Below, piece by piece: positions 29,680 through 63,955 of a stretch of 64,000 bases of DNA (positions within the stretch are counted from its first letter, which is position 1; every line of letters starts with the position of its first letter). The position numbers were made by a program, and so were the translations under genes. The stretch lies in the IMG/VR virus record IMGVR_UViG_3300036770_004723, positions 222,585-286,584 of that record, one strand, 5' to 3'. The notes below the pieces were generated by a model. That model was given only the letters and a program-made list of their open reading frames with translations, did not search any database and was not told the origin of the DNA.

Positions 29680-29737
29680 ATTATACCAAATTTTGGTAAG
29701 CCAGTAAACACCTAATATTGACACACCTCGTTTAGTT
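29680..29737 (-). promoter_or_regulatory. boxed sigma70-like early promoter (variant box without GATC)
   Basis: AACTAAACGAGGTGTGTCAA-9-TTTACT-17-TATAAT. Confidence 0.8.
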
Positions 29738-29741
29738 GGCT

Positions 29742-30281
29742 TTAGTTAAGAGGAAAATTTATCTCTATTTGAGGTATGATCTTCAACGAATTTTTATCAA
29801 TACGGATTGTAATAGGTGTATTGTTTGATAATAAAGTAGCAATAGCATTATCCTTATAAAATTCTATCCGATCAGAACAATCAAGATCTAATGTTGCATC
29901 ATTCCAATGTGCAGCACCACATACTTTTAAATGACTAATAGAAGTTTCAGATTCTTCAATTTTTGAAGGGATTAAAAGTAAATTCTCGCCTTTCATAACA
30001 GCAATAGTTACCAAATGCAGAATCTTGTCGTAATCATTGTATTCGTGTATGAACAAAGATGTAATTGCTTTAGCTATTTTGGGTTCGATTGGATCTTTCG
30101 TGGCCTGTACAATAACTTTTTCAACTACTGTAACTTTGTTAGGTGTATCTATGTTGTTTTTATGTGCGTAAATGTTTAAAAGTGAGTCACCATATTTATC
30201 TAGCAAACTATAAATTGAGGCACCTAAAATAACACATATCAAAGCGACAGTTGAAATAATTTTAACTATTCTATTAACCAT
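29742..30281 (-). CDS. membrane-anchored/exported hypothetical protein
   Basis: N-terminal TM or signal sequence. Confidence 0.75.
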   Translation of the reverse strand: MVNRIVKIISTVALICVILGASIYSLLDKYGDSLLNIYAHKNNIDTPNKVTVVEKVIVQATKDPIEPKIAKAITSLFIHEYNDYDKILHLVTIAVMKGENLLLIPSKIEESETSISHLKVCGAAHWNDATLDLDCSDRIEFYKDNAIATLLSNNTPITIRIDKNSLKIIPQIEINFPLN

Positions 30282-30339
30282 AAGTTTCCTAAATCTTTAG
30301 CAAGTTAATAATAAGTAAGTCAAGTTTGATTTATTGACT

Positions 30340-31377
30340 TTATTTAAAATCTCTTTTAAGAACCAATAAAATATTAGGATCTAATTTAAGTCCTTGAGGC
30401 ACTAAAATATTTTTATAGCAAATCCCTACATGTAGTCTGCAATCGTTGGTTTCGATGTTAAAAATATTATCAAGCAAAAGTGCTGTGTGATCAGGTGCCA
30501 TACTCAACGCAATCTGGTTGAGTAAAATTTCGCGATCTAAATTTTTTAGGTTATGGATTTTGTACGATTTTCCAAGAACACCTGCAATACTTAACAGCAT
30601 ATAACGGAAAGCAGCAATAAAGTCCACATCCAATGTAATGCAGTGACTATTAAACAACTTCTTAAAATCGTAAACTATTAAATTTTCTTCTTTAGCATAA
30701 GAATCTAGCTTTAGATTAAAGCTGTCTTGTATACGTTCAATGTTAGCTACGCTATAAATTTGACTGTAAAATTCTTCACGTCTATACGCATAGAATGGAT
30801 TTTCGTCATCATCAGGTAAATGAGCCTCAGCAATCAAAACTTTAGTGAGTTCTTTTTGTAAGTAACTTGAAATCAAACTTCCTTTGACGCTGTTAATGTT
30901 TCGTATTAAATCAAAACACTGTCTTTCATTTACTTGATCTACTCCGATGCCGTTCTGCCTTAAATAATCCAAAGCAGATTGATCGCGGTAATCATCGACA
31001 TAAATTACATCCGTGATACTTCCAAAATTTACAATTCGTTTAGCACAGTTAGGGCAGGGACTACTCATTACAAAGATAACGAGTTTTTTATAAACACTTA
31101 AATCAAGTGCCTTAAGTTCTGTAAGATTCTTTAACTTATTTAAAGCGTTTTCTTCGGCATGAATAACTGTAGATAATGTTTCACCATTTTTTTCAAATAC
31201 GTGATCTTCCCCACTGGCAACTCCATTACATCCGTCACTTAATATTTGCCAAACTCTCCCTTTTAAATGGCCTACTATAATACTGCCCATTTTCTTTCTT
31301 GTTACTCTAGATCTTTGAGCAGCTGCATACATATCCGGTAAATACGTCAACAACTCTTTATGTTTCTTTAATATCAT
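30340..31377 (-). CDS. dCMP deaminase-like protein with long C-terminal extension
   Basis: GCNG, HAEENA and SPCPNCA Zn motifs, DDYRD; extra ~190 aa. Confidence 0.8.
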   Translation of the reverse strand: MILKKHKELLTYLPDMYAAAQRSRVTRKKMGSIIVGHLKGRVWQILSDGCNGVASGEDHVFEKNGETLSTVIHAEENALNKLKNLTELKALDLSVYKKLVIFVMSSPCPNCAKRIVNFGSITDVIYVDDYRDQSALDYLRQNGIGVDQVNERQCFDLIRNINSVKGSLISSYLQKELTKVLIAEAHLPDDDENPFYAYRREEFYSQIYSVANIERIQDSFNLKLDSYAKEENLIVYDFKKLFNSHCITLDVDFIAAFRYMLLSIAGVLGKSYKIHNLKNLDREILLNQIALSMAPDHTALLLDNIFNIETNDCRLHVGICYKNILVPQGLKLDPNILLVLKRDFK

Positions 31378-31400
31378 TGATAGTTCTCCAGTTAATATCT

Positions 31401-31751
31401 TTAGGCTATGATTTTAAAATACAAAGGCTTTGTATAGGTTAAAAACCTGAACTTGAAGTAGAGTTCAGTATTTACAGGTAAAGCCTCCGGTTTTTTGGAT
31501 CTAGCTAATTGGGAAATTTCATTTGAGATGGTTAAGGTATCTTTACCTAATAAATCTAATAATGACAACTTAGTGGCCACGTCAAAAGGACTTTTAGTTG
31601 GAGATCCTACAATTCTGTGGAACTCTTGATCTAGGTAATGGTTGTGTAGGGTTTCAACAAGTTTCCCGTGCTGATCTAAAAAACGCAATCTAGCGTCGGA
31701 GTCACCTAAAGTAGGTAGGTCAAATGATAGTTTAAAATTTAACTTTTCCAT
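31401..31751 (-). CDS. hypothetical protein
   Basis: GAGGA RBS. Confidence 0.7.
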   Translation of the reverse strand: MEKLNFKLSFDLPTLGDSDARLRFLDQHGKLVETLHNHYLDQEFHRIVGSPTKSPFDVATKLSLLDLLGKDTLTISNEISQLARSKKPEALPVNTELYFKFRFLTYTKPLYFKIIA

Positions 31752-31762
31752 TTAATATTCCT

Positions 31763-32479
31763 CTATATGAAGGATCTTGATCTATCATGCAACCACTTTT
31801 TATGTACTGCCTTACCTAGTTCAGTATTAAATTCTACATTTAAAAAGAAATCATACTGAGACTTTCTTGCCGCATCACAGTCCTGTGACGTTACAATTTT
31901 TCTTCCCGTAAATTCAAAATTAAGTCGATTTAAAATTTTATTAGAGACTTCAGAATTTGAATGCAGTGCGTAAAGTAAATCTGCTTCACGTAAACAAATT
32001 TTTTCTAGTGTATCCGGCACTTTATGTGAATAAGGATATTGAGTTACCTTGATTAATTCTTTAATTTTTTCACAGAAAGCTTTTTCTGATTTTTTAATAA
32101 AAAATTCATCCACTACAGAGCAAGCTGCTTGAATATTTTTGTCATCAGTTTCTGCCCCTAAGCTGTGCAAGGCATCGTGACAAATAGCCGCACAAATAAG
32201 TTCATAAGAACGTTTGCCTTCGAAATAGAGGTTATACAATCTATCAGCTAAGATCATTACCATGATGGAATGTTGATGATTGTGATAGTGATCAATTGAA
32301 TTTCTCAATTTACTTGTCACAACATGCTTGATAAATCTTAAGGATTTCTTATCACCAAATTTTAGACTTTGGTAAAACTTTTCGTATTCTTTATACTCAC
32401 CATTAAAATAAATTTCACACTCACGCCATTCGTTAAATAATCTAATTAGATTTCTTTCGGTTTCAGTTAACGTTAACAC
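31763..32479 (-). CDS. HD-domain phosphohydrolase/phosphodiesterase
   Basis: YHNHQH, AAICHDALH and READL motifs. Confidence 0.8.
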   Translation of the reverse strand: MLTLTETERNLIRLFNEWRECEIYFNGEYKEYEKFYQSLKFGDKKSLRFIKHVVTSKLRNSIDHYHNHQHSIMVMILADRLYNLYFEGKRSYELICAAICHDALHSLGAETDDKNIQAACSVVDEFFIKKSEKAFCEKIKELIKVTQYPYSHKVPDTLEKICLREADLLYALHSNSEVSNKILNRLNFEFTGRKIVTSQDCDAARKSQYDFFLNVEFNTELGKAVHKKWLHDRSRSFI

Positions 32480-32489
32480 AATGTTTTCC

Positions 32490-32819: not shown

Positions 32820-32820
32820 A

Positions 32821-35206: not shown

Positions 35207-35210
35207 AAGA

Positions 35211-35960: not shown

Positions 35961-35973
35961 GATACGTACTCCG

Positions 35974-36030
35974 AAAACAAGAAAAGGCTAGGAGAAGATA
36001 CTTCTTCTTACTCTAGCCTTGATTTACAGT
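35974..36030 (-). terminator. intrinsic terminator preceded by CTGTAAAT motif
   Basis: ACTGTAAATC-AAGGCTAG..CTAGCCTT-TTCTTGTTTT. Confidence 0.65.
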
Positions 36031-40923: not shown

Positions 40924-40931
40924 ATTTACAG
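40924..40931 (-). promoter_or_regulatory. CTGTAAAT late-promoter-like motif
   Basis: AACTGTAAATAC directly upstream of RBS. Confidence 0.5.
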
Positions 40932-42856: not shown

Positions 42857-43198
42857 TTAATTTCCTTTGCAGATAAAGGCAGGAACAGAATAAATTTGAC
42901 CATCAACCCGTACAACATCTTTGTGTCCAGATGCAGGCGCTACCAAATCTTTTCTATCAGGTAATGCGTCCAATACAATTGCACTTACAATCAAAAGCGT
43001 TTCAGGTTCTGGATCAGGCAAACCAGTTACAGTACCATACTTGATTGTATGCAATGGAATACCTAAAACCTCGCCGTGGTATAAATGGTCAGAAGTAACA
43101 CGGGCAATTCCAGAAGATTTAAATTCCAAGATCTGGATTTGACCGGCATTAAGTAATTGAATACGTACAGTATGCGGAGTAAAATTCAGGATTTTCAT
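42857..43198 (-). CDS. conserved-type phage hypothetical protein
   Basis: NFTPH..SG.ARV..GLP.P..IVS..R.DL..P motif pattern common in phages. Confidence 0.8.
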   Translation of the reverse strand: MKILNFTPHTVRIQLLNAGQIQILEFKSSGIARVTSDHLYHGEVLGIPLHTIKYGTVTGLPDPEPETLLIVSAIVLDALPDRKDLVAPASGHKDVVRVDGQIYSVPAFICKGN

Positions 43199-44094
43199 AG
43201 GTGTTCCTTTGAATGTTTCTGTTCTTGATCTTTGTAATAAGGCACTACAACTTCCAACAACTTTTTATAGTTTACTGTACTGTTGATGACTAACGGGTTG
43301 ATAAATTTTGTTAAAGCATTTGGATTTTTCAGACCTTGAATTTGTCGGATCAACTCGTGATAATTTGCTTCCTCTACCGTATGACTTATAAGTGTCCAAC
43401 TTCGGATAAGTCCCTCAAGGTAGTCAAGTTCACGATAATTATGAACTTTAATTACTTCTTTTTCGTAATCTTCAAAACCTTCTAAAGTCCATTTATCTAT
43501 CAATGCGCAGAATTGCGTTTTTACTAAAGATTCTTCAAACTTTTGATCCGCGTACCTGCCTTCAAAAGCCTTAAAGTCTTTGGAAAAGACTGACGTTGCT
43601 TGTAACACAAATTCATGAGCATGTTGGTAATATGAGCGCATGATCTCACCCGGTGTTGCAATAGCTGTTACTATAGCATTGGCAGCGTGAAAAGGTGCAA
43701 GATAATAGCACATTAAAGGACTTTTTTCTTCTTCCAGTTTTTTAATCTCAAGTCTTGCTATACTGGCTTTAAGAATAAGATCGCGATCTTTTTTGCCTGA
43801 TCTGTAATTGGCAATCAATTCACGAAAAATACTAAACTGCGGGTAATAATGTTCTACTATAGGTAAAACACGCTCGGCTAAATTCACAGATAACTCACGC
43901 AACTGATCTTCCATGAATGAAGGAAAACAATCTTGTGAAGTTATGTAATACAACGGAATTGCAATTCTGTCATACGACTTACACCACACAGCTAAAGGCA
44001 CGTTAGCACTCGCACCAAACAAGTGTATAAAATGTTGCTGTTCTTTATTATCCAGTTTTGCATTTAAAATACTTTTAAGAGTAACTGTTTTCAT
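43195..44094 (-). CDS. hypothetical protein, possible Imm5-like helical domain
   Basis: LAERVLPIVE..YP; start moved to 44094 (AAGGA RBS after terminator). Confidence 0.7.
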   Translation of the reverse strand: MKTVTLKSILNAKLDNKEQQHFIHLFGASANVPLAVWCKSYDRIAIPLYYITSQDCFPSFMEDQLRELSVNLAERVLPIVEHYYPQFSIFRELIANYRSGKKDRDLILKASIARLEIKKLEEEKSPLMCYYLAPFHAANAIVTAIATPGEIMRSYYQHAHEFVLQATSVFSKDFKAFEGRYADQKFEESLVKTQFCALIDKWTLEGFEDYEKEVIKVHNYRELDYLEGLIRSWTLISHTVEEANYHELIRQIQGLKNPNALTKFINPLVINSTVNYKKLLEVVVPYYKDQEQKHSKEHL

Positions 44095-44107
44095 AAGATT
44101 TTCCTTT

Positions 44108-44137
44108 AAAAAGAAGGTACGTAAATACGTACCTTCT
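44108..44137 (-). terminator. intrinsic terminator
   Basis: AGAAGGTACGTA-TT-TACGTACCTTCT followed by T-run. Confidence 0.75.
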
Positions 44138-44143
44138 ACCAAT

Positions 44144-44263
44144 TTATTTTTTACCTTTAGATTTTTCACGTTCAACTTGCTTACGGCCATCGCGTATTGT
44201 CAGTGCTATACCTACCACACATACCATAGCAAGAACTATAACCACTATTTCAAATGTACTCAT
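44144..44263 (-). CDS. 39-aa single-TM membrane protein
   Basis: AAGGAG RBS; MSTFEIVVIVLAMVCVVGIALTIRDGRKQVEREKSKGKK*. Confidence 0.75.
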   Translation of the reverse strand: MSTFEIVVIVLAMVCVVGIALTIRDGRKQVEREKSKGKK

Positions 44264-44287
44264 AACAATCTCCTTTAAATTGAGATC

Positions 44288-44345
44288 ATTATACTAAAAA
44301 TTTAGGTAGCTGTAAATGGATGTTCTTGACACACCTAGATCAGTT
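44288..44345 (-). promoter_or_regulatory. boxed sigma70-like early promoter
   Basis: AACTGATCTAGGTGTGTCAA-9-TTTACA-17-TATAAT. Confidence 0.85.
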
Positions 44346-44358: not shown

Positions 44359-44393
44359 TAATTATAGGTACTGATTATAAGTACCTATAATTA
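44359..44393. repeat. 14-bp perfect inverted repeat (hairpin)
   Basis: taattataggtact-gattata-agtacctataatta upstream of the promoter box. Confidence 0.75.
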
Positions 44394-48953: not shown

Positions 48954-49403
48954 TTAATCTCCTAATTTTTTAATTAAACTGTTTAACGTTTGCTTACAAG
49001 AAGATAAACCTTGATATGTAGGCAAACCTTGATCGTAACAAAAGCTATCAAGTTCTTTATCACTTAAAGAGTTAAAGTCTTTTGCTGTTTCTGAGTAAGG
49101 CTGCAACAAGAATCTTACGGCACTATTGACATCGCTGTTAGTTACAGCCATAGTTTTCTTGATCTGTTGTTCCAGATTTTTCAAAGCAAAGTAAATGCCC
49201 AAATCAACTTCAGGGACACCTAACGTAACTGGCTTACACAGGCTTTGGAAAGTATGGCCTGTAGGATAAAGTTCTTGAAAGTACTGATGAAATTGTTCAG
49301 CATTATCACAGAACACACTTTCAACTTCATGCAAACTTTCATCCATAAAGCCGAGACTGTTTTGAAAGTCATGAATTTTGTAAATCATAAAAAATATTTT
49401 CAT
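48954..49403 (-). CDS. hypothetical protein
   Basis: Coupled ORF. Confidence 0.75.
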   Translation of the reverse strand: MKIFFMIYKIHDFQNSLGFMDESLHEVESVFCDNAEQFHQYFQELYPTGHTFQSLCKPVTLGVPEVDLGIYFALKNLEQQIKKTMAVTNSDVNSAVRFLLQPYSETAKDFNSLSDKELDSFCYDQGLPTYQGLSSCKQTLNSLIKKLGD

Positions 49404-49603
49404 TAGTGTGTTTCCTTATTAGCTTGAGCTACAGCCGCAGAAAGTTTGTCAGTAAACACTAGCCAATCTAACCAATCGTTGAATGGCATCATACGGCCGT
49501 AGTCACTGAATTCGAAATTTAACCGATCATACATTTCTCTAAGTGTTTCACCTTGAGCATTTTTGAAGATTTTGTTTGAGTTACTTTCTGTAGACGTATT
49601 CAT
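49403..49603 (-). CDS. small hypothetical protein, first gene after boxed promoter
   Basis: GAGG RBS. Confidence 0.7.
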   Translation of the reverse strand: MNTSTESNSNKIFKNAQGETLREMYDRLNFEFSDYGRMMPFNDWLDWLVFTDKLSAAVAQANKETH

Positions 49604-49632
49604 GATATTTACCTCTTTGTTAAGATGTGTAT

Positions 49633-49690
49633 ATTATAACAAAAATCTGTAGGTCAGTAAATCACTGTTTTTGACACACCTAGATCAGTT
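49633..49690 (-). promoter_or_regulatory. boxed sigma70-like early promoter
   Basis: AACTGATCTAGGTGTGTCAA-9-TTTACT-17-TATAAT. Confidence 0.85.
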
Positions 49691-49900
49691 ATAGGTAAAA
49701 CAAGTAACGAACTTCTCAATGGTTCCGTACCCAAATTCTCTATAAAGATCTTGCACAGTATAGCCAAACTTTTCTATTTTTATTTGTTTAATTTGCTTAC
49801 TGTTTTCCAACATATATAGAAGTGAAGACAAACACTTTAAATCATCTATAAGGCAGTGGTTAATTTCATCACCATTTGTAAGCCATAGTACCTTTAACAT
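49685..49900 (-). CDS. hypothetical protein (stop codon lies in promoter box)
   Basis: GAGG RBS; ends AAC TGA within box. Confidence 0.7.
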   Translation of the reverse strand: MLKVLWLTNGDEINHCLIDDLKCLSSLLYMLENSKQIKQIKIEKFGYTVQDLYREFGYGTIEKFVTCFTYN

Positions 49901-50165: not shown

Positions 50166-50200
50166 AAAGGCGGAATATTCCGCCTTTAATGTATTTACAG
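50161..50200 (-). terminator. intrinsic terminator preceded by CTGTAAAT motif
   Basis: CTGTAAATACATT-AAAGGCGGAA-TA-TTCCGCCTTT-TTGTT. Confidence 0.7.
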
Positions 50201-50202: not shown

Positions 50203-51153
50203 TTAACTAGACTTAGTTAAATTAATTCCTACGGCACCGCTACGCTCACCATCTTCTTCGCTTGTGCTAATAGTTGCTTTTGCCCAACCTGCCGTCAAAA
50301 ACTTTTGTTCAAGTTCTTTACGGTAAACAAGAATACCTTCATAAATTGCTTCATCATCAGCACGAAGGAATGTAGTATAAATTCTATCCTTATGCCATTG
50401 TGTATACCAACCGTTTTCAACTAACTTGTCGAAAGCATCATTTAAGCGATTTAAAACTTCTTCAAATGATAAATGAGATTTGGCGGGCTTCAGATTTTTA
50501 GGTGCAAAAACTTTCATAGTATTTCCTTCTGTTATAGACCAAGAACGTATTTTAACGTTCGGACATTTTGGCAGCGAATGTGTGTAAGGTTCAAGACTCT
50601 TACCTGTTTGCTTGTAGAATTCTGATAAAATTTTGTTTTGTATTTCCATCTTTAGATGCCACAGAGGATCGTCTGCCTTATTGACGTTATTAAGTGAATC
50701 TAATAGACCTCCAGACCAATCGTTCATAAAATGAATTAAATCTTGTTGAACTGGCACTATATTATAGTGATCGATAAATTTTTGTTTCCACTCCTCGTCA
50801 CTAAGATGTATTTTGTTACTTATCCCTTGACCTATTATGTGACACATAAGAGGCGTGACAAATATACTATCAGAATCCTCACCACTAATGTATTTTGCTT
50901 TTGGGTATTGATTATGCCAAACAATATTTTTACAATCTTTTAGTATAAATCCGTCATACTCCTTTTCTCCTCTAGTCCATTCACCAGGAACTCTATGATG
51001 CTCTACCACAGTTAATTCATTGAAGAAAATGTTTGTGATATCAAAAAGTTCAGGTAAAGGTCTTAAAAAATATGAGGATGTGGCAACTTTATTTTCTTTA
51101 TCTACCAGTGTTAAACCTAGTGTCCAAACTTTTTGACCGATTTCATATCTCAC
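50203..51153 (-). CDS. hypothetical protein, paralog of 51165..51809 with fused C-terminal domain
   Basis: High identity over N-terminal 100 aa; extra ~104 aa. Confidence 0.8.
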   Translation of the reverse strand: MRYEIGQKVWTLGLTLVDKENKVATSSYFLRPLPELFDITNIFFNELTVVEHHRVPGEWTRGEKEYDGFILKDCKNIVWHNQYPKAKYISGEDSDSIFVTPLMCHIIGQGISNKIHLSDEEWKQKFIDHYNIVPVQQDLIHFMNDWSGGLLDSLNNVNKADDPLWHLKMEIQNKILSEFYKQTGKSLEPYTHSLPKCPNVKIRSWSITEGNTMKVFAPKNLKPAKSHLSFEEVLNRLNDAFDKLVENGWYTQWHKDRIYTTFLRADDEAIYEGILVYRKELEQKFLTAGWAKATISTSEEDGERSGAVGINLTKSS

Positions 51154-51164: not shown

Positions 51165-51809
51165 TTATTCAACTACACGCCAACGACGGAAACGAATTGT
51201 GTCGCCTTCTACACCAAAATGTTCAATATAATGTTCGAGGGTTTTACCTGTTGTTTCTTTAAAAGTTTGTATAACACGTTTTTGAATCTCTTCAATTTTC
51301 GGCCAGATTTCGTGACATTCAACTTTAGTTGTATCGTCATCTACTATGCCACCATTTAAATCTTCCATAAATCGTGTCAGTGAAAACTGGTTAATTGTTG
51401 ATTTATATTGATCCATGAATTTAGTGCAAGCAGTATTCCAATCTAAATCATTATCCAGTGCCTTTGTCTCTTCAAAAAGTTTTTCAAACAAAGGTGTTGT
51501 AAATAAGCCGTCATTAGAATCTGAAAGCTGGCCGTAGCTTGCGCGTGGGTATTGATTGTGCCAAACACGATCTTGTGTATCCTTAAGTATGAAACCGTCA
51601 TATTGTTTTTCGTCGCTCCACTCACCAGAAACTTTGTGGTGTTCGGTAACAGTCAATTCATTGAAGAAAATGTTTGTGATATCAAACTGATTTGGATAAG
51701 GACGTAAGAAACCGTAAGGGTAAACTGGTTTATTACTTTCTTTGTTTACCAGTGTTAAGCCGATTGTCCAAATTTTTTGATTCAGTTTATAACGCATAAT
51801 GATTCTCAC
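51165..51809 (-). CDS. hypothetical protein, tandem paralog
   Basis: FDITNIFFNELTV.EHH.V.GEW..YDGFILKD..WHNQYP shared. Confidence 0.8.
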   Translation of the reverse strand: MRIIMRYKLNQKIWTIGLTLVNKESNKPVYPYGFLRPYPNQFDITNIFFNELTVTEHHKVSGEWSDEKQYDGFILKDTQDRVWHNQYPRASYGQLSDSNDGLFTTPLFEKLFEETKALDNDLDWNTACTKFMDQYKSTINQFSLTRFMEDLNGGIVDDDTTKVECHEIWPKIEEIQKRVIQTFKETTGKTLEHYIEHFGVEGDTIRFRRWRVVE

Positions 51810-52853: not shown

Positions 52854-52893
52854 GTCAAATTCCTCAGCAAGTCAAATTCCTCAGCAAGTCAAA
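52854..52893. repeat. 17-bp tandem duplication containing the RBS
   Basis: gtcaaattcctcagcaa x2 plus gtcaaa. Confidence 0.9.
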
Positions 52894-52943
52894 ATCGTAA
52901 TCAAGTAACATCGGTTTATGATCAAGGCATTAGAAATATTACG

Positions 52944-53776: not shown

Positions 53777-53815
53777 AATCGACAATAGACACTTACCAAA
53801 ATGTCTATTAGCAAT
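53777..53815. repeat. 39-bp direct repeat copy 1 containing conserved hairpin
   Basis: aatcgacaatagacacttaccaaaatgtctattagcaat, identical to 54199..54237. Confidence 0.9.
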
Positions 53816-53863: not shown

Positions 53864-54178
53864 TTAACGCTTTAAATCGTATTCAGCAAAGCGGTCATAC
53901 CACGCAGAACTTGCATTTTGTTGACTGCCCATACATTCATCGAATACTAACCTTGTAATTTCTTCTTCTAAGTTGTTGCATTTTTCCAAATCTAATTCAC
54001 CAGTTTTATCATAACGCGCTTCCCATTTCAATTTGTTATTTACAGGATAAGCGTGAATGTACAAATGACTTTTTGCCATTGTTTCCATGTCATAAACAAC
54101 TGTCCCATTAAAGCTTCGGATAGTAATTGTATGACCTTTAGCCGCTAATTCATTCATTGCTTTTACAATACGTAACAT
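53864..54178 (-). CDS. hypothetical protein
   Basis: GAGGA RBS; flanked by 39-bp direct repeats. Confidence 0.75.
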   Translation of the reverse strand: MLRIVKAMNELAAKGHTITIRSFNGTVVYDMETMAKSHLYIHAYPVNNKLKWEARYDKTGELDLEKCNNLEEEITRLVFDECMGSQQNASSAWYDRFAEYDLKR

Positions 54179-54198: not shown

Positions 54199-54237
54199 AA
54201 TCGACAATAGACACTTACCAAAATGTCTATTAGCAAT
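54199..54237. repeat. 39-bp direct repeat copy 2 containing conserved hairpin
   Basis: Identical to 53777..53815. Confidence 0.9.
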
Positions 54238-55184: not shown

Positions 55185-55202
55185 AATTCACCTCGTTAAA
55201 TT

Positions 55203-55231
55203 AATTTATTGTGTTAAGAAATACATGTCAA
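55203..55231 (-). promoter_or_regulatory. possible sigma70 promoter
   Basis: TTGACA-17-TAAATT upstream of 54672..55184. Confidence 0.4.
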
Positions 55232-55325
55232 GACACACTGATCTGATCAAATTTACTTTTACCGATTACAGTGAACAAAATAAACATAAGCAAATCAGGC
55301 GCTCTAGTAATATACATCAATGTTT

Positions 55326-57790: not shown

Positions 57791-57800
57791 AAGTTTATCC

Positions 57801-58121
57801 TTAGTATAATTGAACTTTTTTATTGCGATTATATGAACGATATTCGTAATGCTGAATTTCGCCGTTAGTAAAGTGGGATGGAACTAATTGGCGTTTTGTT
57901 TGCCACCCACTATACGCATTTACATCAAACAACAGATCTTCAAGTTGCGTATACAAACCGTCAAGTAAACCAAGGTAGTAATCCACAGACTTTAGTTGAT
58001 ATGAGTCTGGTAAACAAGTACATTGATTTTCTAGTCTCCAGATGATTAATGCAAGTTCTGGAATTTTTTCATCGGTAATTAATGAAATACGTTTTTTATT
58101 TGTTTCCGATACTTTCGACAT
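57801..58121 (-). CDS. hypothetical protein, first gene after boxed promoter
   Basis: ORF downstream of 58183 promoter. Confidence 0.7.
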   Translation of the reverse strand: MSKVSETNKKRISLITDEKIPELALIIWRLENQCTCLPDSYQLKSVDYYLGLLDGLYTQLEDLLFDVNAYSGWQTKRQLVPSHFTNGEIQHYEYRSYNRNKKVQLY

Positions 58122-58182
58122 TTTCTGACTCTCGCTGTTAACAGCAAACTTTTAACAGGCTGTTTGCCTTACCTATGAGATC

Positions 58183-58240
58183 ATTATATCAAAATAAACC
58201 ATATAGGTATATGCTTATTATTGACACACTTAGATCAGTT
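58183..58240 (-). promoter_or_regulatory. boxed sigma70-like early promoter
   Basis: AACTGATCTAAGTGTGTCAA-9-TATACC-17-TATAAT. Confidence 0.85.
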
Positions 58241-58579
58241 AGAGTTAAATACCTTACGTAAATAAATCTTTGTCCGGATTTCATCGCGCTCTAGCTTATT
58301 AAAATCCTTGTTAATAAATTTGAGCAATTCAAGTGTTACATGTGTACCTGCTTTAGTCAGGCAGTCGAAAACAAAAATGTTATCTAGCCGGTAAACGGCA
58401 CTGTTCTTGAGCGTATATACTGTAAAGCCTACTCGTATGTTATAATCAGGATAAATATCACAAGCAACTGCTTTGATCGACACCGTAAAATAAGTGTATA
58501 TTAAAATCAATACAATTGCAGCAATCACGCCAGTTAATATAAAGGCAAGAGTTTCATTTTGCATAAGTACCTCAAACAA
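58235..58579 (-). CDS. membrane-anchored hypothetical protein (stop codon lies in promoter box)
   Basis: N-terminal TM; ends AAC TGA within box. Confidence 0.7.
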   Translation of the reverse strand: MFEVLMQNETLAFILTGVIAAIVLILIYTYFTVSIKAVACDIYPDYNIRVGFTVYTLKNSAVYRLDNIFVFDCLTKAGTHVTLELLKFINKDFNKLERDEIRTKIYLRKVFNSN

Positions 58580-58587
58580 GAAAAATT

Positions 58588-59040: not shown

Positions 59041-59049
59041 ATTTACCTC

Positions 59050-59077
59050 AAAGAGAAAAGGCCAAATTAATGGCCTT
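59050..59077 (-). terminator. intrinsic terminator
   Basis: AAGGCCA-TTAATT-TGGCCTT-TTCTCTTT. Confidence 0.7.
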
Positions 59078-59085
59078 GATCTTAA

Positions 59086-59283: not shown

Positions 59284-59295
59284 GTGTAGCTCCTT

Positions 59296-59628
59296 TTATT
59301 TAGTTAGTAAAATTTCAACAGTTAAATTAAATTCAGGTGAATCATCAATGAAAGAATTATTACCTTTGATAGTATCATCGAAGAAGTCTTTTTCTTCTTG
59401 AATAAGAGTCAGCATGTAAGAAGATTTTGTGCCTGGAAACGCTTTTGCGTATTCTCTCAAGGCTTTTAAGATGATCTGCCAATGGCGTCGGCCAGTTAAG
59501 TGCAATCTTCTTTGATCTTCGCCTTCATTAAGAGTCAGACCAAAAAAGTTTGCCAGTTGGCTACTGCCCGTGAAATACTCATAAACTACATTAGATGTTT
59601 TGATTTTGATTTCTGTAGATTGTGCCAT
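59296..59628 (-). CDS. hypothetical protein, first gene after boxed promoter
   Basis: AGGA RBS. Confidence 0.75.
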   Translation of the reverse strand: MAQSTEIKIKTSNVVYEYFTGSSQLANFFGLTLNEGEDQRRLHLTGRRHWQIILKALREYAKAFPGTKSSYMLTLIQEEKDFFDDTIKGNNSFIDDSPEFNLTVEILLTK

Positions 59629-59664
59629 GTTTATTTTCCTATATAAATACTTAAGTAGTTTCCA

Positions 59665-59690
59665 TGGAGTACACTAAAAAATGTACTCTA
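59665..59690 (-). promoter_or_regulatory. conserved 5'-UTR hairpin (ACAUU..AGUGU family)
   Basis: TAGAGTACATT-TTTT-AGTGTACTCCA. Confidence 0.6.
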
Positions 59691-59720
59691 GTAAACAACT
59701 TTTTGATTTAAACTGTGTAC

Positions 59721-59778
59721 ATTATACCAAAATAAGCTATATATGTATATGCGTATTTTTGACACACTTCGATCAGTT
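59721..59778 (-). promoter_or_regulatory. boxed sigma70-like early promoter
   Basis: AACTGATCGAAGTGTGTCAA-9-TATACA-17-TATAAT. Confidence 0.85.
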
Positions 59779-59780
59779 GG

Positions 59781-60017
59781 CTATTTAACGTCAATGCGTT
59801 TTTGATGTAGTGCCAACTGTATACTTAAATACTGTAGATCTTCGGCAGTTAAAAACATTGTGCCGTCAATACCAAGGTAAGCCTTACCTGCATTTTCTGT
59901 AAGATTCACTACAGCTTCATCAGTTTGTGTATCGTCATCACCTTCGAAAAAACCAACTGTCACATTAAACTTTACTGTATTTGTTAAACACATTTTAGAT
60001 TCCTTAATCTGAAGCAC
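59781..60017 (-). CDS. hypothetical protein
   Basis: Likely start MCLTN after AAGGA. Confidence 0.65.
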   Translation of the reverse strand: MLQIKESKMCLTNTVKFNVTVGFFEGDDDTQTDEAVVNLTENAGKAYLGIDGTMFLTAEDLQYLSIQLALHQKRIDVK

Positions 60018-60249: not shown

Positions 60250-60263
60250 TCAAAGTTTTTCCT

Positions 60264-60812: not shown

Positions 60813-61149
60813 CTAAGGTAAATGTGGACATACGATCAAGATTTTGAATTGCTTGATGTCCACGTACTGCTGTCCTATCAATATCGTCAGATAAGGAATT
60901 CAACACTGTATGAAATTCCGCGATTTCAACATCAACTTTACTTTGACCTACATCAAAGTAATCTGGAACAAGGGCTTCAAGTTGTACTTGAAGCCATCCC
61001 TTACCTTTCAGTGGAAAAGTAAGTGGTATAGTTACAGCCGCGATGTTTGAAGTAACGTCCATCATGTTGTTATCAAGACGGAACTTAATTTGAGTCAGAA
61101 TATTTAATGGATACTCTTCATCATCCACGATAATGATCTTCTTATTCAT
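60790..61149 (-). CDS. hypothetical protein
   Basis: GGAG RBS. Confidence 0.7.
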   Translation of the reverse strand: MNKKIIIVDDEEYPLNILTQIKFRLDNNMMDVTSNIAAVTIPLTFPLKGKGWLQVQLEALVPDYFDVGQSKVDVEIAEFHTVLNSLSDDIDRTAVRGHQAIQNLDRMSTFTLVVCFVIH

Positions 61150-61162
61150 ACTACTCTCCGAT

Positions 61163-61798
61163 TTAGTTGTTTTTAGCTAAATAATTTAATCTACTTAAAT
61201 CCGATATTACTTCAGATGAAGATAAAGATTTAAGTTCTTTTCTGACGATATTAGTTATGTTACGTAACGCAAGTTTATCTCGTTTGGTCTTGATTTTCTC
61301 AACTTCTTCCCAATCTTCTTTAGACAAGCATGAACGTTTAGATAAGTATGGAGTTAAGGATTCTGTGAGTTTTACCACATCAGGAAATGCAATTTCAGCA
61401 CCTTCAAGATCAAACAATTTATGTTTCTCTACACTCAGAAAATAATCTAAGCAAGTTATTTGATTAAAATGCTTCAACAGTATAAACTGTTTGGCACATA
61501 CACGACATTCAAGAATCATACGGCTTAAAGCATTTTCTTTAGTGTCGTCACTTGTTAAAGTAGTGAAACCAAAATCAACTTGTTCCAATCTGAAGGCTTT
61601 ACCCATTGATATAAAATCAACAGCATGTGCAATATCATGAAACAGATCAAATACATTTAATCCTGTAGTGCCTTCTTGCTTATACTGAAACCTATAATGG
61701 CCGAAGTAAGATGTTTTATATCCACCACGGAACCATAAATTTCGGATATTCTTTTCCGCAAATTTTTTAGCTATGTTTAGCCGATTTATTTTTGACAT
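61163..61798 (-). CDS. hypothetical protein with zincin-like HDxxH motif
   Basis: LFHDIAHA with downstream LECRV; AAGG RBS. Confidence 0.6.
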   Translation of the reverse strand: MSKINRLNIAKKFAEKNIRNLWFRGGYKTSYFGHYRFQYKQEGTTGLNVFDLFHDIAHAVDFISMGKAFRLEQVDFGFTTLTSDDTKENALSRMILECRVCAKQFILLKHFNQITCLDYFLSVEKHKLFDLEGAEIAFPDVVKLTESLTPYLSKRSCLSKEDWEEVEKIKTKRDKLALRNITNIVRKELKSLSSSEVISDLSRLNYLAKNN

Positions 61799-61825
61799 AA
61801 ACTACCTTTTAACGAAGATTGCTTG

Positions 61826-62065
61826 TCATTGCATTTCGACAATTTGAACACTGAACATTTCTGTTTTAAATTCAGGAAACTGACGGCAGAAGTTTCTGAT
61901 ATGTGACTCTGCTTCAGACCTCAAGTAATGATCCATGTTATCAATAGCTTTATCTTTCGATTCTTGGATAACAGCAGACACAAAAGTCTCTGTAGTCAAC
62001 TTACGTAGTACGACCGCACACTTAGCCATCTTGATTCTCCACGGGAATATCCCAACCGTTTTCAA
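61826..62065 (-). CDS. small hypothetical protein
   Basis: Likely start MAKCA after GGAG. Confidence 0.65.
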   Translation of the reverse strand: MKTVGIFPWRIKMAKCAVVLRKLTTETFVSAVIQESKDKAIDNMDHYLRSEAESHIRNFCRQFPEFKTEMFSVQIVEMQ

Positions 62066-62483
62066 TAAACTTTTTCAAGTTTTCTGTGCGATAGATCTTA
62101 AATGTGAATAAATAAAAGCGAACATCAAGCTTGCCGATTAGGTCTAAATGATCCCAATTAAACATGCTGAGCGGTTTCTTTGCAAAACTCCAGAACAAAA
62201 CAAACGGCCATGTTTTAGGATGTCTTTGTCTGAAACTTAATTTAACAAACTCTTCTTGAGTGCCATCAAACTTTTTATCCATGTGCGCTTGATGGTAAAC
62301 AATGATTCCCCAATAAACGAAGACCTTAACAAAATACTGAAAGAAAATTGACCACACTATGGCAATCAAAGGCCAGCCAATTACAAATCCGATTAAAATC
62401 TTGCCAAACGTATGATTAACGTATTCACCAAGATAAAACACAAAATGCCAAACAGCATTAACTACGCTGATAAAAGTTTCCAT
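62022..62483 (-). CDS. membrane protein
   Basis: Hydrophobic Trp/Phe-rich segments; GAGG RBS. Confidence 0.75.
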   Translation of the reverse strand: METFISVVNAVWHFVFYLGEYVNHTFGKILIGFVIGWPLIAIVWSIFFQYFVKVFVYWGIIVYHQAHMDKKFDGTQEEFVKLSFRQRHPKTWPFVLFWSFAKKPLSMFNWDHLDLIGKLDVRFYLFTFKIYRTENLKKFIENGWDIPVENQDG

Positions 62484-62554
62484 TTAGTATTACCTCATAG
62501 GTTTTAACCATTAAACTGTTTCGCACTCACCGCCTTCATATCCTTGAATTAAGT

Positions 62555-63289
62555 TCAAGGCCAATTAACGAGATGAATTTTACCTTCCTTCAATTTTTTC
62601 TCGAATTCAGTAAAGCTAATGCGGTTACGTAGCCGAACATTTTCTTCTTCGACCAAATCAAAGATTTTCTCGATTAAATAATCAAGTTCTCGGTAATCTT
62701 TAAAGTTCACAGAACCTACAAAGTTTAAATCCAAGGCACCATTCATAACAGCACTTCGTTTAAAATCTTCATCACTTAAATCAACAGCGGATAAAATGAT
62801 ATCAAACGCATCAGGATCTTGTAATTCATTATTTTGGTCAGTTTGATCAGGTGGCGTTAATTTGACTTCTATGTCGGACAGCGCAACCTGCAATCTATCC
62901 TGTAGACACGCAGTAAGTACATCGTCCAACTTTTTCACAGAATGTTTAATAGACATAGCTGAAAGTTTTACTATTTCAGTCTTATCCACTTCAATTTTTA
63001 AATCAGGCATATTCAAATTCAAAAGCTTTATGAAAAATGAATAACCTGTTTTAGATTGACGTACTTCACCTAGACTATTTGTAGACAGTGAAAACTGCGC
63101 TTTAATATAATCTTCAGGTTCTTCTATTGAAACAGGAAGCCAAATTTTGTTAGGATCATCACCTAATTTTACTTGTACAAAAAGAGCATCCTGCAAGCAA
63201 GAAGAATCGACATATAAATAAACGTACATAAGTCCCCCGATTAAATCTCGTTTTGTTCCACAAGTTAAAACATAGAGTTTAACTTGCAT
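62555..63289 (-). CDS. hypothetical protein
   Basis: 244-aa ORF. Confidence 0.75.
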   Translation of the reverse strand: MQVKLYVLTCGTKRDLIGGLMYVYLYVDSSCLQDALFVQVKLGDDPNKIWLPVSIEEPEDYIKAQFSLSTNSLGEVRQSKTGYSFFIKLLNLNMPDLKIEVDKTEIVKLSAMSIKHSVKKLDDVLTACLQDRLQVALSDIEVKLTPPDQTDQNNELQDPDAFDIILSAVDLSDEDFKRSAVMNGALDLNFVGSVNFKDYRELDYLIEKIFDLVEEENVRLRNRISFTEFEKKLKEGKIHLVNWP

Positions 63290-63540
63290 TCATACTCATT
63301 ACTTCTTATACGGTGAAACGCATAAAGTTTAAACTGGACAACTTGATCTTCGCTTAAGCCAACTTTTGAATTAAGTAGATCACGAATTTGTTTTGTAAGA
63401 CCTTCATTACGTATAAGGTCTACGTCTGTAGCGCCAGAATTGTTGCCTGTCATAAAAGGCTGTACTAATTTAACTACCTGATTTAAAAATGTCACGATAC
63501 CCACCAATTGATTAAGTAGGTGCAGACAAAAAATCTGCAC
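63265..63540 (-). CDS. hypothetical protein
   Basis: ORF in - strand run. Confidence 0.6.
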   Translation of the reverse strand: MQIFCLHLLNQLVGIVTFLNQVVKLVQPFMTGNNSGATDVDLIRNEGLTKQIRDLLNSKVGLSEDQVVQFKLYAFHRIRSNEYECKLNSMF

Positions 63541-63549
63541 CTGACATGT

Positions 63550-63855
63550 TTACATTAAGCAACTGAAGTCCACGTTATTAGTGGACACAGATACAATCTG
63601 GTCAAAGTTAATTGTATCCATCTTATAAGATGAATCGGTTAAAGAATCATCCAACTGCTTGCTAAGTAAAGTCTTTTTGATTTGAACTAATACTGATAAC
63701 GTGAATCCACCTAAGCCTGATTCTACAAACTTTTTACGTGACAGATAATCGATCTCAGTGACTACACCGAATAAATGTTCAGGAATATCGTTGAATTTGA
63801 TTTCTACGATAACACCAACTTTAATTTGATTAGGTTTAACTGTTGCTTGGTTCAT
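63550..63855 (-). CDS. SH3/KOW-like hypothetical protein, first gene after boxed promoter
   Basis: GAGG RBS; similar to N-domain of 57030..57485. Confidence 0.75.
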   Translation of the reverse strand: MNQATVKPNQIKVGVIVEIKFNDIPEHLFGVVTEIDYLSRKKFVESGLGGFTLSVLVQIKKTLLSKQLDDSLTDSSYKMDTINFDQIVSVSTNNVDFSCLM

Positions 63856-63897
63856 AGCTTACCTCTCTTTGTTTAATCTTCTACTTAAGAAGTGACT

Positions 63898-63955
63898 ATT
63901 ATATCAAAAAATAGCAGGCTAGTAAACCATTGTTTTTGACACAGCTCGATCAGTT
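63898..63955 (-). promoter_or_regulatory. boxed sigma70-like early promoter
   Basis: AACTGATCGAGCTGTGTCAA-9-TTTACT-17-TATAAT. Confidence 0.85.

What the first reader, a model, noticed from the sequence alone, without database searches (positions are those of the whole stretch)
29680..63955. Six promoter cassettes with an invariantly spaced 20-bp upstream box (AACTGATCNAGGTGTGTCAA-9-[-35]-17-TATAAT)
Seen: boxes at 29718-29737, 44326-44345, 49671-49690, 58221-58240, 59759-59778 and 63936-63955 (- strand consensus AACTGATC[TG]A[GA]GTGTGTCAA). Each lies exactly 9 nt upstream of a weak -35 (TTTACA, TTTACT, TATACA or TATACC) and a perfect TATAAT 17 nt further on. The spacers differ freely while the box and distances do not, so this is selection on geometry rather than recent duplication. 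Established: ordinary UP elements are AT-tracts, not 20-bp sequence-specific boxes. Inference: the box (about -45 to -64) binds a dedicated activator, possibly virion-delivered or a hijacked host factor, or a modified RNA polymerase, defining a phage-specific early regulon. It includes an inverted TTGACA that could bind sigma region 4 or a mimic.
Basis: partly seen in the sequence, partly recalled or inferred. Interest (0 to 1): 0.8.

Follow-up and report, generated by a model that had tools for sequence, protein, structure and literature searches.

The report
Jumbo-phage early promoter cassettes, upstream block
The six repeats are real early-type promoters of an uncultured jumbo phage. Each carries a strictly conserved, non-AT-rich block at about -64 to -47 that related phages keep at the same position with their own sequence, which points to an unidentified, probably phage-specified, protein that reads it.

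Summary
Six boxes lie on the - strand (0.06 expected by chance), each followed by 9 nt, a weak -35, 17 nt and TATAAT. All six sit in gene gaps ahead of small orphan genes.

The window is part of a 286.6-kb uncultured jumbo phage contig. By topoisomerase similarity its nearest isolates are Phage NCTB and the Dickeya and Erwinia jumbo phages, a group reported to lack its own RNA polymerase.

The core is a T4-type early promoter: R-TTKAC at -36..-31, A-tract at -46..-42, TTTTGn plus TATAAT, and C-1/A+1. The spacers are therefore not fully free.

The new part is the block at -64..-47 (AACTGATCnARGTGTGTC). It is about 85% identical between genomes whose shared proteins are only 27-58% identical. 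Ten of its positions never vary, while -56 and -54 vary freely.

NCTB, Dickeya phage JA11 and Dickeya phage AD1 keep the same layout (block, AAAA, 33 nt, -10) with different block sequences. JA11 and AD1 infect the same host species. This favours a phage-specified reader over a fixed host factor.

The cassettes also resemble PeSL cassettes. The upstream gene's stop codon often lies in the block, some copies carry terminator hairpins, and mosaic junctions occur at cassettes.

No binding or transcript data exist. It is a new variant of a known kind, of moderate interest.

The parts
29680..29737 (-). Cassette 1. Block/box 29718-29737 (AACTAAACGAGGTGTGTCAA), -35 TTTACT 29703-29708, TGG+TATAAT 29680-29688, predicted start near 29673. 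It drives a GNAT-family ORF at 29187-29651.
   Evidence: GNAT assignment by Pfam. The upstream ORF stops 4 nt before the box.
44288..44345 (-). Cassette 2. Box 44326-44345, -35 TTTACA 44311-44316, TATAAT 44288-44293 (no TGn), predicted start near 44281. It drives a 39-codon hydrophobic ORF (44144-44263), followed by ORF 43195-44190.
44359..44393 (-). Strong AT-rich stem-loop (14-bp stem) just upstream of cassette 2. It is a candidate terminator or attenuator for upstream transcription.
   Evidence: -19.0 kcal/mol, z = -4.86, and none of 200 shuffles folds as well.
49633..49690 (-). Cassette 3. Box 49671-49690, A-tract AAACA, -35 TTTACT 49656-49661, TTTTGT+TATAAT 49633-49644, predicted start near 49626. 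It drives ORF 49403-49603. The TGA inside the box (49685-49687) is the stop codon of upstream ORF 49685-49900.
58183..58240 (-). Cassette 4. Box 58221-58240, -35 TATACC 58206-58211, TTTTGA+TATAAT 58183-58194, predicted start near 58176, 55-nt leader, ORF 57801-58121. The TGA in the box (58235-58237) is the stop of upstream ORF 58235-58579. A weak AT hairpin spans the -35.
   Evidence: Hairpin z = -1.95.
59721..59778 (-). Cassette 5. Box 59759-59778, A-tract AAATA, -35 TATACA 59744-59749, TTTTGG+TATAAT 59721-59732, predicted start near 59714, 86-nt structured leader, ORF 59296-59628.
   Evidence: Leader fold (z = -1.88). A second copy, identical over 127 bp, lies elsewhere in the same contig (L011).
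63898..63955 (-). Cassette 6. Box 63936-63955 (AACTGATCGAGCTGTGTCAA), A-tract AAACA, -35 TTTACT 63921-63926, TTTTGA+TATAAT 63898-63909, predicted start near 63891, ORF 63550-63855.

Best explanation
Each site is a composite early-gene cassette of a jumbo phage that relies on the host RNA polymerase. The core is a T4-type sigma-70 early promoter with a weak -35 (R-TTKAC), a T-run plus TGn extended -10, a perfect TATAAT, and an A-tract at -46..-42 that matches the proximal UP subsite for the alpha C-terminal domain. Fused to it is an 18-bp, asymmetric, non-AT-rich block at -64..-47 that is read base by base by a protein. Sitting where class I activators and alpha-CTD sit, it would raise or time transcription of the early regulon. 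Secondarily, the cassette is a portable gene boundary. It often supplies the stop codon of the upstream gene, sometimes holds a terminator hairpin around the -35, and carries its own leader and ribosome site. In this it behaves like the PeSL cassettes of T4-like phages. What is shown: the sequence anatomy, the conservation, the clade distribution and the mosaic junctions.
For: Six of six boxes have a fixed promoter layout in gene gaps. In the window, every intergenic TGnTATAAT with a T-run has the box and none lacks it. In related contigs, all 22 evaluable exact box matches have TATAAT 32-33 nt downstream. The logo from 25 non-redundant copies in genomes A, B and C shows -64 AACTGATCnARGTGTGTCAAAAAtAg -39, an invariant T at -35, TTTTG at -18..-14, TATAAT, and C-1/A+1. 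Mean pairwise identity between A and B/C is 0.85 for the box, 0.34 for the spacer interior and 0.28 for the upstream flank, while shared proteins are only 27-58% identical. Variation along the block is very uneven, with an index of dispersion of 7.3 and P<1e-4: ten positions are invariant and -56 carries all four bases. The same architecture at the same distance occurs with lineage-specific blocks. NCTB has AACTTTTTTATCnTGGTAC|AAAA-33-TATAAT, JA11 has AACTCTGCAAAWnnGTGTCC|AAAA-33-(-10), and AD1 has GCATAAAWCTGGAC|AAAA-33-TGnTAYAAT. JA11 and AD1 have the same host species. No cellular genome among 185,579 species carries the cassette. The clade is reported to have no RNA polymerase of its own but to encode sigma factors and gp33, a T4-like strategy (PMC7824862, PMC7412058). 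Published T4-like early promoters have GTTTAC with T/G at -33 and an A-rich -40..-44 (PMC1524935). PeSL-like traits: the upstream stop codon is at box positions 4-6 in 11 cassettes and within 7 nt upstream in 10 more; 13 of 31 spacers fold significantly, some with G-U pairs; mosaic copy L011 exists; B/C identity shifts across a cassette; and the downstream genes are almost all orphans.
Against: There are no transcript ends, binding data or expression data, because the source is a subsurface metagenome with no RNA run. No candidate reader protein was identified; Pfam finds nothing DNA-binding in the ORFs I searched, which were the larger ORFs of 29-64 kb. The block has no dyad or direct-repeat symmetry that would point to a known regulator family. 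With TGnTATAAT and an A-tract, the promoters should already be strong with host polymerase alone, so the block may not be needed for activation. Within-genome similarity could be inflated by recombination between cassettes. The variable positions do show genome-specific flavours, for example GATCCAAG only in B/C. PaBG, a clade member, lacks this layout.
Confidence: 0.5

Rival explanations
1. The block is read by the host machinery alone. It would be an unusual distal UP-like or bendable element for the native alpha-CTD, or the site of a host transcription factor that the phage exploits.
For: Its position at -64..-47 is where alpha-CTD and class I activators bind. The adjoining A-tract is a near-consensus proximal UP subsite. 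NCTB's block contains a T6-AT tract, which is UP-like. TG/CA steps next to an A-tract are flexible. This last point rests on general knowledge and was not tested.
Against: The block is GC-containing and invariant at single-base level, which is not typical of UP elements. JA11 and AD1 infect the same host species but have different blocks, GTGTCC versus CTGGAC. No cellular genome shows the cassette. No known host-factor consensus (CRP, FNR, Fis, IHF, PhoB) fitted on inspection; this was done by eye, not with a tool.
Confidence: 0.15
2. The block is an operator for a phage-encoded shut-off repressor. The repressor would silence the early regulon at the early-to-middle switch by blocking the alpha-CTD/UP contact on which these weak -35 promoters depend.
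For: The same conservation and clade-specificity evidence as for the best explanation. The block abuts the A-tract. The core promoter already looks strong without help.
Against: There is no direct evidence either way. Operators more often overlap -35, -10 or +1.
Confidence: 0.12
3. The block has no role in transcription. It is a homology patch, or a selfish part of the cassette, that promotes recombinational shuffling of orphan genes as proposed for PeSLs, and it is kept similar by gene conversion.
For: Mosaic copy L011 has a flank like cassette 6 and a body identical to cassette 5 over 127 bp. B/C identity changes across a cassette, 95.8% versus 85.8%. The GNAT gene lies on different sides of a cassette in A and C. 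The leader is shared between cassette 3 and L003 although the downstream ORFs are unrelated. Assembly contigs break at the boxes. The PeSL precedent is in PMC2839356 and PMC4122927.
Against: Neutral homology would vary evenly, but here ten positions never vary while two vary freely. The block always keeps one orientation and one distance to the -10, and it is never found alone. The layout persists in lineages where the sequence has changed.
Confidence: 0.1
4. The block works in RNA. It would be a 3'-end element of the upstream transcript, next to the terminator hairpin, that controls termination, read-through or stability.
For: All genes are co-directional, so the block is transcribed from upstream. 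In about 40% of copies a hairpin with a U-run follows directly, some with G-U pairs that only work in the sense RNA.
Against: Most of the window's six copies have no convincing hairpin. Terminators without the block exist at 50166-50187 and 59058-59077. The block never occurs without a -10 at 32-33 nt. Rfam finds nothing.
Confidence: 0.06
5. The inverted TTGACA in the box is a -35 for a divergent promoter, or a decoy for sigma region 4.
For: TTGACA is present on the + strand in all six copies.
Against: No conserved -10 lies 16-18 nt beyond it on the + strand (inspection). There are no + strand genes there. The hexamer is not conserved in NCTB, JA11 or AD1.
Confidence: 0.02

Closest known systems
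PeSL (promoter-early stem-loop) cassettes of T4-like phages RB49/phi1, T4/PST and KVP40/nt-1 (Arbiol 2010, PMC2839356; Comeau 2014, PMC4122927)
   Same: Both are composite intergenic units in orphan-rich early regions. Both combine the stop codon of the upstream gene, a sigma-70-type early promoter, a stem-loop (with G-T pairs) that may sit between or over the -35 and -10, a Shine-Dalgarno sequence and a start codon. Both are repeated many times per genome and are found at mosaic junctions between related phages. The nt-1 stem type (A3-4 G3 ... C3 T3-4) and its -35 (TTGYVH) look like the B/C copies here.
   Different: In PeSLs the region upstream of -35 is simply AT-rich. Here it is an 18-bp sequence-specific block with invariant G/C positions. 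The stem-loop is optional here, significant in 13 of 31 copies and weak in most of the window's six. The phage belongs to a different clade (NCTB/Dickeya/Erwinia jumbo phages), not the T4-like myoviruses. Mini-circle formation was not tested.
T4-type early promoters and their Alt-modified polymerase (Nolan 2006, PMC1524935, and references cited there)
   Same: Both have GTTTAC-like -35 at -36..-31 with T or G at -33, an A-rich UP-like stretch at -40..-44, GT-rich bases before -12, a strong TATAAT, and C near -1. The precedent that an injected phage enzyme (Alt) changes the alpha subunit and favours phage early promoters is the nearest known analogue of a phage-specified reader.
   Different: T4-like logos are described as A-rich upstream, with no 18-bp specific block. 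No Alt homologue was looked for or found here.
UP element / alpha-CTD contact, with consensus positions -59..-38 as I recall them from Estrem 1998/1999 (papers cited in PMC1524935 but not read here)
   Same: AAAAA(T/C)AG at -46..-39 fits the proximal subsite AAAAAARNR. The element occupies the same upstream window.
   Different: The distal half (-57..-47) is GTGTGTC-containing, not A/T-rich, and it is conserved base by base.
Class I activator sites and the T4 MotA box
   Same: Both are sequence-specific sites at a fixed distance from the -10, combined with a weak -35. MotA shows that a phage factor can read an asymmetric box.
   Different: The MotA box sits at -30 and needs AsiA. Class I sites are usually dyads centred near -61.5 or further upstream. 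This block is asymmetric, is centred near -55 and has no identified reader.

Membership tests
Sigma-70-type (T4-type early) promoter | -10 hexamer close to TATAAT | tested here: met
   Perfect TATAAT in 6 of 6. Near-invariant in 25 non-redundant relatives.
Sigma-70-type (T4-type early) promoter | -35 element 16-18 bp upstream (TTGACA, or GTTTAC in T4-likes) | tested here: met
   The spacer is 17 nt in 6 of 6. The hexamers are TTTACT/TTTACA/TATACA/TATACC preceded by R. The clade logo shows T-35 invariant, G/T at -33, A at -32 and C at -31. This matches the published T4-like description.
Sigma-70-type (T4-type early) promoter | Transcripts start about 7 nt after the -10, early in infection, made by host holoenzyme | not testable with these tools
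   No RNA run holds the sequence. Only the conserved C-1/A+1 (23 and 24 of 25 copies) hints at the start.
PeSL composite cassette | Early promoter joined to a stem-loop able to terminate upstream transcription | tested here: inconclusive
   13 of 31 spacers fold better than interior shuffles (z < -1.64), down to -17.5 kcal/mol. Among the window's six, only 58221 (z = -1.95) and 59759 (z = -1.37) have weak internal hairpins, and 44326 has a strong separate one upstream.
PeSL composite cassette | Upstream gene's stop codon at the 5' edge; Shine-Dalgarno and start codon at the 3' edge | tested here: met
   The stop codon lies inside the box (positions 4-6) in 11 cassettes and 2-7 nt before it in 10. 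A Shine-Dalgarno sequence and ATG lie 18-86 nt after the predicted start in the window.
PeSL composite cassette | Located in orphan-rich plastic regions and at indel or mosaic junctions between close relatives | tested here: met
   Nearly all ORFs searched in 29-64 kb have no Pfam family. Mosaic copy L011 exists. There is an identity step across a cassette between B and C. Gene order differs around cassette 1. Only fragments of the relatives were available.
PeSL composite cassette | AT-rich, non-specific region upstream of -35; host phage is a T4-like myovirus | tested here: not met
   The upstream region is a specific block with invariant G/C positions. The nearest isolates are NCTB, Dickeya JA/AD1 and Erwinia jumbo phages.
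UP element | A/T-rich proximal subsite at about -46..-38 | tested here: met
   AAAAA(T/C)AG is the clade logo. In the window it is clear in 49671, 59759 and 63936 and weaker in the other three.
UP element | A/T-rich distal subsite at about -57..-47 | tested here: not met
   Positions -53..-47 are GTGTGTC and are invariant.
Class I activator-dependent promoter | Identified activator and its site; activity depends on it and on helical phase | not testable with these tools
   No reader was identified. The distance is fixed at 32 nt, with 33 nt in the topoisomerase-gene cassette of A, B and C. There is no dyad symmetry.

The most novel reading that the evidence does not exclude
The -64..-47 block is the operator of a clade-specific, phage-encoded (possibly virion-delivered) factor, or of a phage-modified alpha subunit, that co-evolves with its site across a whole lineage of jumbo phages (this phage, NCTB, Dickeya JA11 and AD1). 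That would define a previously undescribed way of commanding the early regulon through a class I-like upstream contact.
Probability: 0.3. Interest if true: 0.7.

Novelty: new variant of a known kind. Interest (0 to 1): 0.5.

Why it matters
Early promoters decide how a lytic phage seizes the host polymerase in the first minutes of infection. For T4-like phages the known upstream help is an AT-rich UP-like stretch and alpha-subunit modification.

A base-specific 18-bp block at the same place, kept in geometry but changed in sequence between lineages, even between two phages of one host species, would mean this jumbo-phage group uses its own reader for early genes.

The block is also a precise marker for annotating early regulons and module boundaries in uncultured jumbo phages. 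It may be a compact, strong and possibly phage-gated promoter part.

Tried and rejected
- Isolate phage searches: megablast of 8 kb of the window against isolate phages found nothing. Blastn of one cassette found only chance hits.
- Literature search for the box sequence returned only primers and unrelated text. Searches for descriptions of promoters in this phage clade found none.
- Divergent promoter from the inverted TTGACA: rejected, because there is no conserved -10 and the hexamer is not conserved in relatives.
- Known host-factor consensus sequences (CRP, FNR, Fis, IHF, DnaA, LexA, PhoB) were compared by eye. None fits, and this was not a formal test.
- Dam control via the GATC in the box: GATC is absent from the NCTB, JA11 and AD1 blocks and from cassette 1, so it is not a defining feature. 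GATC is over-represented in the window (observed/expected 1.32).
- A fixed-register hairpin could not be scored on an alignment because the register shifts by 1 nt between copies. I folded each copy separately instead.
- AAAGTTTGT, seen in several leaders of relatives, was too common in the window to evaluate.
- Reads: only assembled contigs of two DNA runs were available. They break at the boxes and give no usable joint; the single joint has a 29-nt side and is probably another cassette.
- PaBG was checked for the layout and lacks it.
- Rfam found no family and ARAGORN found no tRNA.

Full report
**Observation**

The pattern AACTGATCKARGTGTGTCAA, allowing up to 3 mismatches, occurs six times in the window. 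All copies are on the - strand, at 29718, 44326, 49671, 58221, 59759 and 63936. Shuffles give 0.06 matches on average and none of 100 reaches six. The composite pattern GTGTGTCAA-9-TWTAC-18-TATAAT recovers exactly the same six sites.

Each copy has the layout box, 9 nt, hexamer, 17 nt, TATAAT. Each lies in a gap between co-directional - strand ORFs. A Shine-Dalgarno sequence and ATG follow 18-86 nt after the predicted start. Four boxes are exact, 63936 differs at one base and 29718 at two.

**Where the window comes from**

- The three boxes of locus L038 have the same spacing as those at 58221, 59759 and 63936, and L038 and L005 are 100% identical to the window. The window is therefore part of IMGVR_UViG_3300036770_004723, a 286.6-kb viral contig.
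- The best-holding public run is a subsurface metagenome. A hot-spring metagenome holds a roughly 97% identical strain. No RNA run holds the sequence.
- No isolate phage matches at DNA level.
- A 594-aa protein and the topoisomerase II large subunit of the relatives find Phage NCTB (49.8% identity), Dickeya phages JA11/JA29/AD1, Yersinia phage fHe-Yen9-02 and Erwinia jumbo phages as nearest isolates.
- Most of these isolates (NCTB and the Dickeya and Erwinia phages) belong to the 'Lupandier' group of PMC7412058. PMC7824862 places NCTB, Lu11 and PaBG of that group in jumbo subgroup 2.2, and its group 2 is described as lacking its own RNA polymerase but encoding sigma factors and a gp33 homologue. 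That is a T4-like strategy in which early genes depend on the host enzyme.
- Nearly all ORFs I searched in 29-64 kb are orphans. The exceptions are a GNAT, an HD domain protein, a deaminase-like protein, a radical SAM protein and a YunG-like protein.

**The family of cassettes**

Scans of IMG/VR with two patterns found the box many times in only three or four related jumbo contigs:
- the window's own contig, here called A;
- 3300033997_000243, 319 kb, here called B;
- two contigs of 3300024308, 214 kb and 81 kb, here called C, which are 96-100% identical to B.

A metagenome scan added one more relative, L111. All 22 evaluable exact box matches in A, B and C have TATAAT 32 or 33 nt downstream. 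The other 26 matches, in unrelated contigs, have none.

I collected 35 cassettes, 25 of them non-redundant. Their logo is:
- -64 AACTGATCnARGTGTGTCAAAAAtAg -39;
- an invariant T at -35, followed by t, G/T, a, c;
- a variable stretch;
- TTTTG at -18..-14, then TATAAT;
- C at -1 and A at +1.

In the window, every intergenic TGnTATAAT with a T-run has the box and none lacks it.

**What the core is**

The part from -46 to +1 is a T4-type early promoter. The published description for five T4-like phages is GTTTAC at -36..-31 with T or G at -33, an A-rich UP-like stretch at -40..-44, GT-rich bases before -12 and C near -1 (PMC1524935). That fits position by position.

The A-run at -46..-42 followed by (T/C)AG matches the proximal UP subsite. 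Its 20-bp box is the upstream part of one continuous conserved block that reaches the -35.

**What is new: the block at -64..-47**

This part is not AT-rich and is conserved base by base.
- Mean pairwise identity between cassettes of A and of B/C is 0.85 for the box, 0.77 for the next five bases, 0.34 for the spacer interior, 0.80 for the last six bases and 0.28 for the upstream flank.
- The few proteins shared by the window and the fetched B/C fragments are only 27-58% identical.
- Variation along -64..-42 is very uneven. Ten positions never vary, -56 carries all four bases and -54 is A or G. The index of dispersion is 7.3, and no one of 10,000 even redistributions exceeds 2.8.

This is the pattern of a site read base by base, not of a young or neutrally drifting repeat.

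**Clade-wide comparison**

| Phage | Block and layout | Copies found |
|---|---|---|
| This phage (A, with B/C and L111) | GTGTGTC, AAAAA, with the C 34 nt before TATAAT | 35 collected (25 non-redundant) |
| Phage NCTB | AACTTTTTTATCnTGGTAC, AAAA, 33 nt, TATAAT or TATACT | about nine in 100 kb |
| Dickeya phage JA11 | AACTCTGCAAAWnnGTGTCC, AAAA, 33 nt, a -10-like hexamer | nine in 50 kb |
| Dickeya phage AD1 | GCATAAAWCTGGAC, AAAA, 33 nt, TGnTAYAAT | four or five in 28 kb |

In A, B, C, NCTB, JA11 and AD1 one such cassette precedes a topoisomerase gene.

The geometry and the A-tract are thus shared, while the block is lineage-specific. JA11 and AD1 were both isolated on Dickeya solani yet differ in the block. 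This is hard to reconcile with a single host factor of fixed specificity and is what a phage-specified reader predicts.

Pseudomonas phage PaBG, a more distant member, lacks this layout. It has a different repeated promoter-like motif, TAGACK followed by ACTGATYGCAGTTATG. No cellular genome among 185,579 species carries the cassette. The few hits are single conserved loci or chance.

**Cassette as a module (PeSL-like traits)**

The PeSL cassettes of T4-like phages are defined as follows: the stop codon of the upstream gene in an AT-rich region; a sigma-70-type early promoter; a stem-loop (with G-T pairs) in variable position, most often between -35 and -10; then a Shine-Dalgarno sequence and start codon. 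They occur in orphan-rich plastic regions and at recombination junctions (PMC2839356, PMC4122927).

The cassettes here show the following:
- The upstream ORF ends at the TGA or TAA at box positions 4-6 in 11 cassettes, including 49671 and 58221 in the window. It ends 2-7 nt before the box in 10 more.
- The substitutions TGA to TAA in variant boxes (AACTAAAC, AACTAATC) keep a stop codon there.
- 13 of 31 spacers fold significantly better than controls in which only the interior is shuffled. The stems are of the type AAAAGGCGG...CCGCCTTTT or GGGGTGGC-TTCG-GCTGCCCC, and the latter has G-U pairs. They enclose the -35 and end in the T-run before the -10.
- In the window the internal hairpins are weak (58221 and 59759), but cassette 2 has a strong separate stem-loop just upstream.
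- Locus L011 of the same contig is a third copy. It is identical to 59656-59782 over 127 bp, and its upstream flank is 97% identical to that of cassette 6.
- Between B and C, identity is 95.8% on one side of a cassette and 85.8% on the other.
- The GNAT gene lies downstream of cassette 1 in A but upstream of the corresponding cassette in C.
- Cassette 3 and L003 share the leader (CACATCTTAACAARGAG) although their downstream ORFs are not detectably related.

These traits make the cassettes work like PeSLs. They are not members in the strict sense. The upstream region is a specific block rather than AT-rich, the stem-loop is optional and the phage is not a T4-like myovirus.

**Mechanism**

Shown:
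- the anatomy and its conservation;
- the exclusive association of the block with a -10 at a fixed distance;
- the clade distribution;
- the module-boundary features.

Inferred:
- these are early promoters used by host holoenzyme, starting at the conserved CA;
- alpha-CTD contacts the A-tract;
- a protein reads the block.

The block occupies the position of distal alpha-CTD contacts and class I activators, is asymmetric and differs between phages of one host. I therefore favour a phage-specified reader. This could be a phage-encoded (possibly injected) factor, or alpha modified by a phage enzyme as with T4 Alt. It would boost or time the early regulon. I put this at about 0.5, including uncertainty on the sign of regulation.

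Rivals, with my estimates:
- native host alpha-CTD or a host factor (0.15);
- a shut-off operator (0.12);
- a pure recombination or selfish homology patch (0.10), argued against by the uneven variation and the fixed orientation and distance;
- an RNA 3'-end element (0.06), argued against by box-free terminators and hairpin-free cassettes;
- a divergent promoter or sigma region 4 decoy (0.02), argued against by the lack of conservation of the inverted TTGACA and the absence of a matching -10.

**Novelty**

In the held literature I found no description of this block or of promoters in this clade. It is best classed as a new variant of a known kind: T4-type early promoter or PeSL-like cassettes carrying a lineage-specific, sequence-specific upstream module.

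Interest is moderate.

Noticed in passing
window - strand: 9679-9686, 17863-17870, 28152-28159, 36022-36029, 40924-40931, 50193-50200 (intergenic); also 31470-31477, 54038-54045: A second motif, (TTAA)A/T-CTGTAAAT(A), stands ahead of many - strand genes. It often follows a TAA and is followed by a hairpin. Of 14 CTGTAAAY matches, 11 are on the - strand (7.5 expected). The same motif (CTGTAAAT/C), often in tandem, fills intergenic regions of JA11, AD1 and PaBG. It resembles T4-like late promoters (TATAAATA; CTAAATA in Aeh1) and may be the promoter class of the clade's own sigma factor. In some places it lies too close to the ATG to serve that gene.
   Followed up: partly
window 55203-55250 (- strand), gap 55185-55325: A possible degenerate relative of the cassette: GATCAGATCAGTGTGTC abuts directly on TTGACA-17-TAAATT. 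The GTGTGTC motif is thus about 11 bp (one helical turn) closer to the -10 than in the six cassettes. It is a single case and could be chance.
   Followed up: no
L011:1-168 (same contig as the window), compared with window 59656-59782 and 63933-64000: A further cassette copy is a mosaic. It is 127 bp identical to cassette 5 (box, promoter and leader start), joined to an upstream flank 97% identical to that of cassette 6. The locus is cut 103 bp from the box, so the 127-bp identity might also mark a contig end at an assembly repeat.
   Followed up: partly
window 52854-52906; 53777-53815 and 54199-54237: There is a 17-bp tandem repeat (about 3 copies, unit GTCAAATTCCTCAGCAA on the + strand) at the start of a gene gap. 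A 39-bp exact repeat containing a hairpin (AATAGACA...TGTCTATT) occurs in two neighbouring gaps. These gaps also share CCGTTTGTTTC.
   Followed up: no
window 50902-51045 vs 51546-51686: Neighbouring ORFs 50203-51153 and 51165-51809 share a 144-bp stretch at 78% identity. They are probably tandem paralogues.
   Followed up: no
leaders after the -10 in several cassettes (window 58122-58176; L017, L019, L021, L022, L050, L053): A subset of cassettes shares a leader that begins CAT(T/A)GGT(T)AAGGCAA and folds into a 5'-terminal stem-loop. Another subset shares CACAT(C/T)NNAACAARGAG running straight into the ribosome site. There seem to be at least two leader classes.
   Followed up: partly
window 59761 (box of cassette 5) in run X2: The roughly 97% identical strain from a hot-spring metagenome has G>T on the + strand. 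This is C>A at the otherwise invariant -47 of the block (TGTGTC to TGTGTA).
   Followed up: no
whole window: GATC is over-represented (326 observed, 247 expected, ratio 1.32), while CCGG is low (0.65). A methyltransferase-like ORF lies at 8547-9647. Five of the six boxes contain GATC.
   Followed up: partly
window 4874-4950: At the switch from + strand genes (1-4873) to - strand genes there is a perfect bidirectional terminator-like hairpin (AAAAAGCCGC...GCGGCTTTTT).
   Followed up: no
L016:2-2929 (- strand, genome A) compared with L027:8949-10592 (genome C): The topoisomerase II medium-subunit gene of genome A is 976 codons against 547 in B/C, and it has HNH endonuclease matches near residues 246-277. 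This suggests an inserted endonuclease or intein-like element.
   Followed up: no
L119 (PaBG 1-50000), gaps at 4376-4492, 4955-5230, 12714-12832, 20509-20764: PaBG has its own repeated promoter-like unit: TAGAC(K), then a conserved spacer ACTGATYGCAGTTATG, then a -10-like hexamer. Two copies are followed by TAAACTGG(A/T)NGTGCGAGAGC.
   Followed up: no
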